Origin: Macrostomum lignano
Lineage: Eukaryota
Length of the DNA stretch: 64,000 nt
Assembly: GCA_002269645.1 (NCBI GenBank)
Contig: NIVC01000353.1
Coordinates: 593,877 to 657,876, forward strand
Reading direction: 5' to 3'
Part shown: positions 62,002 through 62,166 of the stretch, one piece after another
Layout: every line of letters starts with the position of its first letter
How positions within the stretch are numbered: position 1 is the stretch's first letter
Notes under the pieces: generated by a model
The model's database searches: none
The model's input: only the letters and a program-made list of their open reading frames with translations
What the model was told of the DNA's origin: nothing
Made by a program: the position numbers and the translations under genes

Positions 62002-62166
62002 CTTCGACGAGAACGCTGCCCACCGAGGCGAGGGCCATCCTGCTAGCGGCGGCCTGTGCTCCACCACCTGCCTCACCAGAGGCCGCGAGTCTTTTCTCTA
62101 CCGCTCCGACTCGGATTTTGACGTTTCGCCGAAGACGTCGCGTCACTCCTCTCTAGCCAGCGATTT
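62002..62166 (+). CDS. PDE4: PDE4/dunce cAMP phosphodiesterase, first shared (UCR1) coding exon, phase 2 to phase 2
   Basis: Acceptor catgcAG at 62000-62001 and donor GTAAGT at 62167. Translation from 62003 is [54 protein letters not shown]. This matches from memory the PDE4 UCR1 signature FDV(E/D)NG...[13 protein letters not shown](Y/F)(D/E)xSPKxMSRNSSxAS. The frame is not in the ORF track because it has no start codon. Confidence 0.93.

What the first reader, a model, noticed from the sequence alone, without database searches (positions are those of the whole stretch)
62054..62092. Compensating frameshift pair in PDE4 UCR1 erases the PKA feedback site, with the ancestral peptide still in the shifted frame
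Seen: the exon reads [18 protein letters not shown], but the shifted frame over 62056-62082 reads GTG CTC CAC CAC CTG CCT CAC CAG AGG = VLHHLPHQR. Restoring one G after 62056 and deleting one C at 62083 gives [18 protein letters not shown]. Established: the family consensus is GLVL...QRRESFLY, and PKA phosphorylation of RRES activates PDE4 long forms. As written, the -3 Arg is Gly. Inference: either this is a real, recent -1/+1 double frameshift giving a PKA-uncoupled PDE4 allele or paralog, or it is two homopolymer assembly errors 27 bp apart. Both indels are homopolymer-length changes, but 2 kb of the nearby RT ORF is indel-free.
Basis: partly seen in the sequence, partly recalled or inferred. 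Interest (0 to 1): 0.8.

Follow-up and report, generated by a model that had tools for sequence, protein, structure and literature searches.

The report
Frame-shifted stretch in a PDE4 exon
One exon of an animal cAMP phosphodiesterase (PDE4) gene has a 27-base stretch written one base out of frame, which removes a universally conserved arginine of its protein kinase A site; this is more likely two small assembly errors than real biology, but only sequencing reads can settle it.

Summary
Window 62002-62166 (+) is the PDE4 exon that opens UCR1. It has the same splice structure as homologous exons from three other animals. As written it reads ...[29 protein letters not shown]...; the +1 frame over 62056-62082 reads VLHHLPHQR.

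The shifted frame is the ancestral one. A profile built from 153 independent PDE4 exons scores the as-written peptide at 57.2 bits, no better than random. The repaired peptide scores 74.6 bits, a level reached by 0 of 10,000 null peptides. The repair is the single best of about 18,500 possible +1/-1 pairs. The same scan on three control exons gains only 2.4-4.4 bits.

RRES is present in all 233 PDE4 exons retrieved, from molluscs to mammals. As written, the site is R-G-R-E-S-F. It is weakened, not erased.

Real or artefact cannot be settled here, because no independent sequence of this species was found. I favour two consensus errors (about 0.7) for four reasons:
- the broken residue is invariant;
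- the ancestral peptide is undecayed;
- single-species compensated pairs rarely survive validation;
- a microsatellite 0.8 kb away has about 30 times more non-unit indels than six sister arrays.

A real recent allele or lineage change is about 0.25.

The parts
62002..62166 (+). PDE4 exon encoding the start of UCR1 (165 nt; one base completes a split codon, then FDEN...ASD plus two bases of the next codon).
   Evidence: Translation. It scores 57-75 bits against a PDE4-exon HMM. Full-length homologues carry PDE4_UCR and PDEase_I directly downstream of the matching region. L001, L003 and L004 have the same acceptor and donor phases.
62000..62001 (+). Splice acceptor AG (tgcag|C TTC GAC).
   Evidence: Read directly. 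L001 has cacag|C TTC GAC and L004 has ttcag|C TTT GAC at the same position.
62167..62172 (+). Splice donor GTAAGT (GAT TT|GTAAGT, phase 2).
   Evidence: Read directly. Homologues: CT|GTGAGT in L001, CC|GTAAGT in L003, AT|GTGAGT in L004.
62054..62058 (+). 5' indel site: one base is missing relative to the ancestral CTN GTG (Leu-Val).
   Evidence: L001 reads GGC CTG GTG CTG and L003 reads GGT CTC GTC CTA, against GGC CTG -TG CTC in the window. The exhaustive scan places the best insertion after 62054-62056.
62056..62082 (+). Shifted-frame (+1) reading VLHHLPHQR, the ancestral peptide.
   Evidence: It matches the family consensus G-L-V-L-x-x-[LFM]-P-(H)-Q-R. Differences from L003 fall mostly on third positions of this frame.
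62057..62083 (+). As-written reading CSTTCLTRG (nine codons out of the ancestral frame).
   Evidence: Its HMM score lies at the 69th percentile of random 27-mers. No homologue among 234 carries anything like it.
62083..62084 (+). 3' indel site: one extra C (AGG C CGC), which restores the downstream frame.
   Evidence: L004 reads CAT CAG AGA CGA GAA TCG, against CAC CAG AGG C CGC GAG TCT in the window. Deleting either C is optimal.
62078..62095 (+). Remnant of the PKA site as written: R-G-R-E-S-F (canonical Q-R-R-E-S-F after repair).
   Evidence: R at P-3 and R at P-2 occur in 151 of 151 homologues, and RRES in 233 of 233. [quoted passage not shown]

Best explanation
The exon is an ordinary, selectively maintained PDE4 UCR1 exon whose true sequence most likely reads ...[18 protein letters not shown]..., with a canonical PKA site. 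The written sequence probably carries two single-base consensus errors, one base dropped at 62054-62058 and one C added at 62083-62084. These put nine codons out of frame.

Shown here:
- the identity of the exon;
- the positions of the indels;
- that the shifted frame is the ancestral, selected frame.

Inferred:
- that the two indels arose in assembly rather than in the germ line.
For: 1. The broken residue is invariant. P-3 Arg and P-2 Arg occur in 151 of 151 homologues, and RRES in 233 of 233 exons retrieved, from molluscs, arthropods, lamprey, fish, birds and mammals.
2. The ancestral peptide in the shifted frame shows no decay. Every consensus position (G, L, V, L, L, P, Q, R) is kept, although the N-terminal half of this exon has diverged strongly from all relatives. 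The shift is therefore either extremely recent or not real.
3. The rest of the exon is under clear constraint. [17 protein letters not shown] is identical over 17 of 17 residues to P0001, and both splice sites are intact.
4. Published base rate (PMC8935012): of 624 candidate genes with a compensated frameshift pair, only 27 were seen in more than one species and 6 passed quality filters. The authors stress noise from sequencing and assembly errors. They also report that regions spanned by such pairs are less conserved than average, which is the opposite of the situation here.
5. Local quality hint. The (CTAT)n array at 62881-63998, 0.8 kb downstream, has 16 indels that are not a multiple of the repeat unit (14.3 per kb). 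Six other GATA-type arrays in the window have 3 in 6,466 bp (Fisher p = 3e-11), at similar substitution density.
6. Arrays of up to 4 kb of perfect microsatellite imply a long-read assembly, and the typical residual error of such assemblies is a 1-bp indel (my own knowledge).
Against: - Two errors 27 nt apart that happen to cancel are unlikely if errors are independent and rare.
- The six clean microsatellite arrays (0.46 non-unit indels per kb) and a 2-kb intact RT ORF suggest good overall consensus accuracy.
- Neither site is a long homopolymer (GG to G, or another base; C to CC).
- The irregular array could be natural. Three pairs of identical variants lie within 3 to 9 bp of each other, which looks like duplication by slippage.
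- This exon is unusually divergent elsewhere: it lacks the V and G of FDVENG and one residue of SPKSMSR. The lineage therefore tolerates change in this region.
- The geometry (1-bp deletion plus 1-bp insertion, tens of nt apart) matches validated real cases such as NCR3LG1 and SPATA24.
Confidence: 0.7

Rival explanations
1. The pair is a real, very recent compensated frameshift, either fixed in this species or carried on the sequenced haplotype. A 1-bp deletion shifted the frame, and a 1-bp insertion 27 nt downstream rescued it just before R-E-S-F-L-Y. The resulting PDE4 long form would have GLVL...QR replaced by CSTTCLTRG and a degraded PKA site (R-G-R-E-S-F). PKA feedback activation would be predicted to be blunted.
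For: - The net frame is preserved, and exon length remains a multiple of 3, as in the homologues.
- The restoring indel lies at the last possible position before the strictly conserved RESFLY, as selection would require.
- Most of the window looks accurate.
- The exon is divergent elsewhere.
- Validated pairs have the same geometry (PMC8935012).
- The written site keeps Arg at P-2 and P-4 and Phe at P+1, and PKA can use non-canonical sites (PMC7361990). The change might therefore be tolerable.
Against: - RRES is invariant in 233 of 233 relatives, and GL[VI]L occurs in 134 of 151.
- Real pairs prefer poorly conserved regions (PMC8935012).
- The intermediate single frameshift would knock out all long isoforms.
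- No second sequence carries the written peptide.
- There is a local excess of non-unit indels nearby.
Confidence: 0.22
2. The exon belongs to a decaying PDE4 duplicate or pseudogene. The two indels are real, unselected lesions that happen to cancel.
For: - The N-terminal part of the exon is unusually divergent.
- Only one PDE4 exon lies in 64 kb that is otherwise about half tandem repeats.
Against: - There is no stop codon.
- Both splice sites are intact.
- 17 of 17 residues match P0001 across [17 protein letters not shown].
- All other length differences from relatives are multiples of 3.
- Two random lesions that cancel within 27 nt, with no other damage, are improbable.
Confidence: 0.05
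3. There is no frameshift. The resemblance of the +1 frame to GLVL...QR is a coincidence, and CSTTCLTRG arose by ordinary substitutions.
For: None beyond the formal possibility.
Against: - 0 of 10,000 null peptides reach the repaired score, about 6 SD above the null mean.
- The repair is the global optimum of about 18,500 variants. It gains 17.5 bits, against 2.4-4.4 in controls.
- DNA of L001, L003 and L004 aligns codon for codon in the shifted register.
Confidence: 0.01

Closest known systems
PKA site of mammalian PDE4 long isoforms (Arg-Arg-Glu-Ser-Phe at the start of UCR1; Ser54 in PDE4D3, Ser126 in PDE4D5; MacKenzie et al. 2002 as cited in PMC6613170)
   Same: The exon is the same and the downstream motif [10 protein letters not shown][FY]D.SPK is the same. 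After repair the site is QRRESF. PDB 4WZI (PDE4B) aligns as [20 protein letters not shown], E = 2e-6.
   Different: As written, the P-3 Arg is Gly and the preceding GLVL...Q segment is replaced. The rest of the gene (remainder of UCR1, UCR2, catalytic domain) lies outside the window and was not seen.
Pairs of compensatory frameshifting mutations (Biba, Klink and Bazykin 2022, PMC8935012), e.g. NCR3LG1 (1-bp deletion plus 1-bp insertion, 32 nt apart) and SPATA24 (14 nt apart)
   Same: A 1-bp deletion plus a 1-bp insertion a few tens of nt apart, with the ancestral peptide recoverable from the shifted frame.
   Different: Validated cases are shared by several species or supported by mRNA or protein, and they lie in poorly conserved regions. 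This one is seen in a single sequence, is unsupported, and hits an invariant functional residue.
Residual 1-bp indel errors in long-read genome assemblies that disrupt coding frames (my own knowledge, e.g. Watson and Warr 2019; not retrieved here)
   Same: Single-base gain and loss in G/C dinucleotide runs, in an assembly that spans kilobase-long microsatellites, close to an array with an excess of non-unit indels.
   Different: Such errors usually appear singly and in longer homopolymers. A cancelling pair in otherwise clean sequence is not the typical pattern.
Bivalve-type PDE4 UCR1 exons (P0039 from Dreissena polymorpha; P0037 and P0044)
   Same: These are the best BLOSUM62 matches to the repaired exon: SGGL[VI][25 protein letters not shown].SRHSS.
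   Different: The as-written exon is only 57% identical to them by BLASTP. The window exon lacks the V and G of FDVENG, has a shorter linker, has an extra His before QRRES, and has one residue fewer in SPK-TSRHSS. The source species was not identified.

Membership tests
PDE4 (cAMP-specific phosphodiesterase 4), UCR1-opening exon | Conserved block ESFLYRSDS[DE][FY][DE].SPK....SR[NH]SS | tested here: met
   [23 protein letters not shown]. HMM score 57.2 bits as written. 412 library hits to the homologue P0001. Hits named cAMP-specific phosphodiesterase 4 in several species.
PDE4 (cAMP-specific phosphodiesterase 4), UCR1-opening exon | Homologous region sits directly upstream of the PDE4_UCR and PDEase_I domains in full-length proteins | tested here: met
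   In the homologues P0055 and P0067, the match lies at 383-443 and 525-583, followed by PF18100 and PF00233. For the window gene itself this is not testable, because the downstream exons lie outside the window.
PDE4 (cAMP-specific phosphodiesterase 4), UCR1-opening exon | Conserved exon boundaries (acceptor before the last base of a split codon that precedes FD; donor two bases into a codon after S[ED]) | tested here: met
   The window, L001, L003 and L004 share both boundaries and phases.
PDE4 (cAMP-specific phosphodiesterase 4), UCR1-opening exon | PKA consensus Arg-Arg-Glu-Ser-Phe | tested here: not met
   As written the site is R-G-R-E-S-F. It is met only after the +1/-1 repair. The motif is invariant in 233 of 233 relatives.
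Pair of compensatory frameshifting mutations (real evolutionary event) | Two indels of length not divisible by 3, with a net change divisible by 3 and the ancestral peptide recoverable between them | tested here: met
Pair of compensatory frameshifting mutations (real evolutionary event) | Derived state supported by independent data (reads, mRNA, protein, or a second species or assembly) | not testable with these tools
   No sequence of this species was found. Five exact look-ups of window ORFs failed. Two exact DNA scans of the metagenome collection gave no match. Protein searches found no copy of either version.
Pair of compensatory frameshifting mutations (real evolutionary event) | Typically located in weakly conserved protein regions (PMC8935012) | tested here: not met
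   The shifted stretch covers GL[VI]L (134 of 151), Q at P-4 (147 of 151) and R at P-3 (151 of 151).
Assembly or consensus indel artefact | Reads from the same individual disagree with the assembly at the two sites | not testable with these tools
   No read data are available.
Assembly or consensus indel artefact | Independent signs of a locally raised indel error rate | tested here: inconclusive
   The (CTAT)n array at 62881-63998 has 14.3 non-unit indels per kb, against 0.46 per kb in six other arrays. However, the clustering of identical variants is also compatible with natural slippage.

The most novel reading that the evidence does not exclude
The written sequence is correct. This animal, or the sequenced haplotype, would then carry a PDE4 long form in which a recent compensated frameshift replaced GLVL...QR by CSTTCLTRG. 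That would break the otherwise invariant Arg-Arg-Glu-Ser PKA site and give the first natural PDE4 long isoform with weakened or lost PKA feedback activation.
Probability: 0.2. Interest if true: 0.65.

Novelty: not a real feature. Interest (0 to 1): 0.3.

Why it matters
If the pair is real, it would be a rare validated compensated frameshift inside a deeply conserved regulatory motif. It would also be a natural experiment on whether PKA activation of PDE4 long forms is dispensable. That feedback loop is considered a central part of cAMP desensitisation (PMC6613170).

If it is an artefact, which I consider more likely, its value is practical:
- It marks a place where the assembly should be corrected.
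- An annotated protein from this locus would carry a false CSTTCLTRG segment and a false loss of the PKA site.
- The HMM-guided +1/-1 scan used here, with control exons, is a quick way to flag such cases.

Tried and rejected
- **Independent copies of this locus.** I looked up exact products of five window ORFs. Two span both indel sites, two flank the exon, and one is the RT ORF. None is on record, so the species is absent from the collection and nothing can be concluded from the failures.
- **Exact DNA scans of the metagenome collection.** A 26-mer from the shifted stretch and a 36-mer from the conserved part gave no match.
- **Word-indexed protein searches.** The as-written exon gave one relative and the repaired exon gave three. 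No near-identical relative was found with either version.
- **Pfam on the exon peptide.** No hit, because PF18100 starts downstream of this exon.
- **Rfam on the window.** No family found, so no taxonomic clue.
- **tblastn of 153 PDE4 fragments against the window.** No other PDE4 exon was found.
- **Self-BLAST of 55.5-62.9 kb.** I was looking for dispersed repeat copies that could calibrate local indel rates. There were none.
- **Homopolymer length spectrum.** Uninformative about sequencing technology.
- **Codon third-position GC in the two frames of the 27 nt.** It is 8 of 9 in both frames (read by eye), so it has no discriminating power.
- **Internal acceptor at caccag|A (62079/62080).** I rejected this as a way to avoid the shifted stretch, because the upstream part of the exon is conserved in frame.
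- **Chance resemblance.** Rejected.

Full report
**1. What is there**

Window 62002-62166 on the + strand is a 165-nt exon. It is bounded by an acceptor (tgcag|C) and a canonical donor (TT|GTAAGT at 62167-62172). In the frame starting at 62003 it reads [55 protein letters not shown].

A word-indexed protein search found one relative, P0001, from a metagenome contig: [62 protein letters not shown]. An exhaustive HMMER search with P0001 found 412 relatives. Full-length relatives carry PF18100 (PDE4_UCR) and PF00233 (PDEase_I) immediately downstream of the matching region. Named hits include cAMP-specific phosphodiesterase 4 from Mytilus, Octopus, Dreissena, insects, lamprey, fish, birds and mammals. 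PDB 4WZI (PDE4B) matches at E = 2e-6.

The genomic contigs of three relatives (L001, L003, L004) have the same acceptor and donor positions and phases. The exon is therefore the PDE4 exon that opens UCR1 and carries the PKA site. No other PDE4 exon lies in the window.

**2.

The next frame over 62056-62082 reads GTG CTC CAC CAC CTG CCT CAC CAG AGG, which is VLHHLPHQR. Adding one base to complete a CTN Leu codon at 62054-62056, and removing one C of the CC at 62083-62084, gives [18 protein letters not shown].

At the DNA level the homologues align in that register:
- L001: GGC CTG GTG CTG ... CAG CGC CGC GAA
- L003: GGT CTC GTC CTA CAA AAC CTA CCT CAG CGG AGA GAG
- L004: CAT CAG AGA CGA GAA TCG
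- window: GGC CTG -TG CTC CAC CAC CTG CCT CAC CAG AGG C CGC GAG

Differences from L003 fall mainly on third positions of the shifted frame and are mostly synonymous there. This shows which frame was under selection.

**3. It is not chance**

I built an HMM from 153 aligned stretches of the 151 homologous proteins collected without using the window.
- The as-written peptide scores 57.2 bits and the repaired peptide 74.6 bits.
- 5,000 shuffles of the 27 nt score 56.3 +/- 2.9 bits (maximum 70.9). 5,000 random window 27-mers score 56.2 +/- 2.7 bits (maximum 69.2). None reaches 74.6.
- The as-written segment sits at the 69th percentile of the null, so it looks like random sequence.
- The same exhaustive scan on L004 (not in the model), L003 and L001 gains only 4.4, 2.4 and 2.7 bits, against 17.5 for the window.

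**4. How conserved is what was lost**

In 151 of 151 homologues the two residues before E-S-F are Arg-Arg. Gln at P-4 occurs in 147 of 151, and GL[VI]L in 134 of 151. With the third search, RRES is present in 233 of 233 exons.

[quoted passage not shown] It describes phosphorylation of this motif by PKA as an activating feedback.

As written, the site is R-G-R-E-S-F. The P-3 Arg is lost, but Arg at P-2 and P-4 and Phe at P+1 remain. The PKA consensus is RRXS/T followed by a hydrophobic residue, yet non-canonical sites are used, especially in protein substrates (PMC7361990). 'Weakened' is therefore justified; 'erased' is not.

**5. Real or artefact**

No independent sequence of this species could be found, so this step is inference.

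For an artefact:
- The change hits an invariant residue.
- The ancestral peptide shows no decay, even though the exon's N-terminal half has diverged strongly from every relative. The shift is therefore very recent or unreal.
- Biba et al. found 624 candidate genes with compensated pairs. Only 27 were shared by more than one species and 6 survived filtering. Real pairs lay in weakly conserved regions (PMC8935012). From their Table 1, I infer that most single-species candidates are not validated events.
- The window comes from a long-read assembly, since it spans microsatellite arrays of up to 4 kb.
- The (CTAT)n array at 62881-63998, 0.8 kb from the exon, has 16 non-unit indels. Six other GATA-type arrays have 3 in 6,466 bp (Fisher p = 3e-11), with similar substitution density.

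Against an artefact:
- The other arrays and a 2-kb RT ORF are clean.
- The two sites are not long homopolymers.
- Two independent errors that cancel are improbable.
- Identical variants in the irregular array cluster in a way that natural slippage would also produce.
- The geometry matches validated real pairs.

I put an artefact at about 0.7, a real recent allele or lineage change at about 0.22, a decaying paralogue at about 0.05 and coincidence at about 0.01.

**6. Mechanism**

If the artefact reading is right, the locus encodes a canonical UCR1 start. PKA phosphorylates the Ser of QRRESF and relieves UCR1/UCR2 autoinhibition, as in other long forms. This is established for mammalian PDE4 and inferred here by homology.

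If the sequence is real, the long form keeps the phospho-acceptor Ser and the whole downstream UCR1. It loses the P-3 Arg and the GLVL segment and gains two Cys residues. The predicted effect is blunted activation by PKA, which is untested.

**7. Novelty and score**

The exon is a known kind of element, and compensated frameshift pairs are a known phenomenon. The combination would be noteworthy only if reads confirm it. Overall interest is 0.3. The novel reading has a probability of about 0.2, with interest of about 0.65 if true.

Noticed in passing
window 62881-63998: This (CTAT)n array has 16 phase-breaking (non-unit) indels, 14.3 per kb. Six other GATA-type arrays (17336-18109, 32782-33349, 36671-37079, 45136-49136, 52113-52511, 58506-58820) have 3 in 6,466 bp. 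Seven of the 16 are the same 'tatc|atc' type. It is either a zone of low consensus quality or a naturally degenerate array.
   Followed up: partly
window 1-64000: About 32.8 kb (51%) of the window lies in tandem arrays with TRF score of at least 400. There are at least 24 separate arrays with units of 4 to 43 bp. They include a 4.0-kb (ATAG)n array (45136-49136), a 5.0-kb 25-bp satellite (5191-10218) and a 2.9-kb 34-bp satellite at 98% identity (22627-25534). This is an unusually repeat-dense intron or upstream region.
   Followed up: no
window 49379-52100 (- strand): A Penelope-like retroelement with an intact 672-aa ORF carrying RVT_1 and a GIY-YIG endonuclease (49379-51397). Just upstream (51397-51650) the coding signal passes through three frames. 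One of them holds a motif that resembles, from my memory of these elements, the N-terminal region of Penelope-like elements (VLNLSNYRLSDCETEILGMGKNFVPAP). The element therefore has frame breaks or a multi-ORF layout. A (GATA)n array abuts its 5' side (52113-52511).
   Followed up: partly
window 62003-62050 and 62129-62140: Apart from the shifted stretch, this PDE4 exon is unusually divergent. It reads FDENAAH where almost all relatives read FDVENG (both V and G are missing). It also has a shorter linker before GGL, an extra His before QRRES, and SPK-TSRHSS with one residue fewer than SPKSMSR[NH]SS. All of these length differences are multiples of 3.
   Followed up: partly
window 4599-5129 (both strands): A GC-rich stretch is open on both strands (176 aa on +, 157 aa on -). 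The + frame is rich in Arg, Ser and Cys (MSRASRRATPTARRGRQQ...FCCCCCC...). There is only a weak sub-threshold Pfam hit. It could be a CpG-island-like 5' exon or promoter region of the PDE4 gene or of another gene.
   Followed up: no
L004 48-278 (Logan SRR25569780): P0153 is another divergent PDE4 UCR1 exon: [33 protein letters not shown]...[10 protein letters not shown]. It lacks GLVL but keeps HQRRES and shares SRHSSLASD with the window. It may come from the lineage closest to the window's source organism, which remains unidentified.
   Followed up: partly
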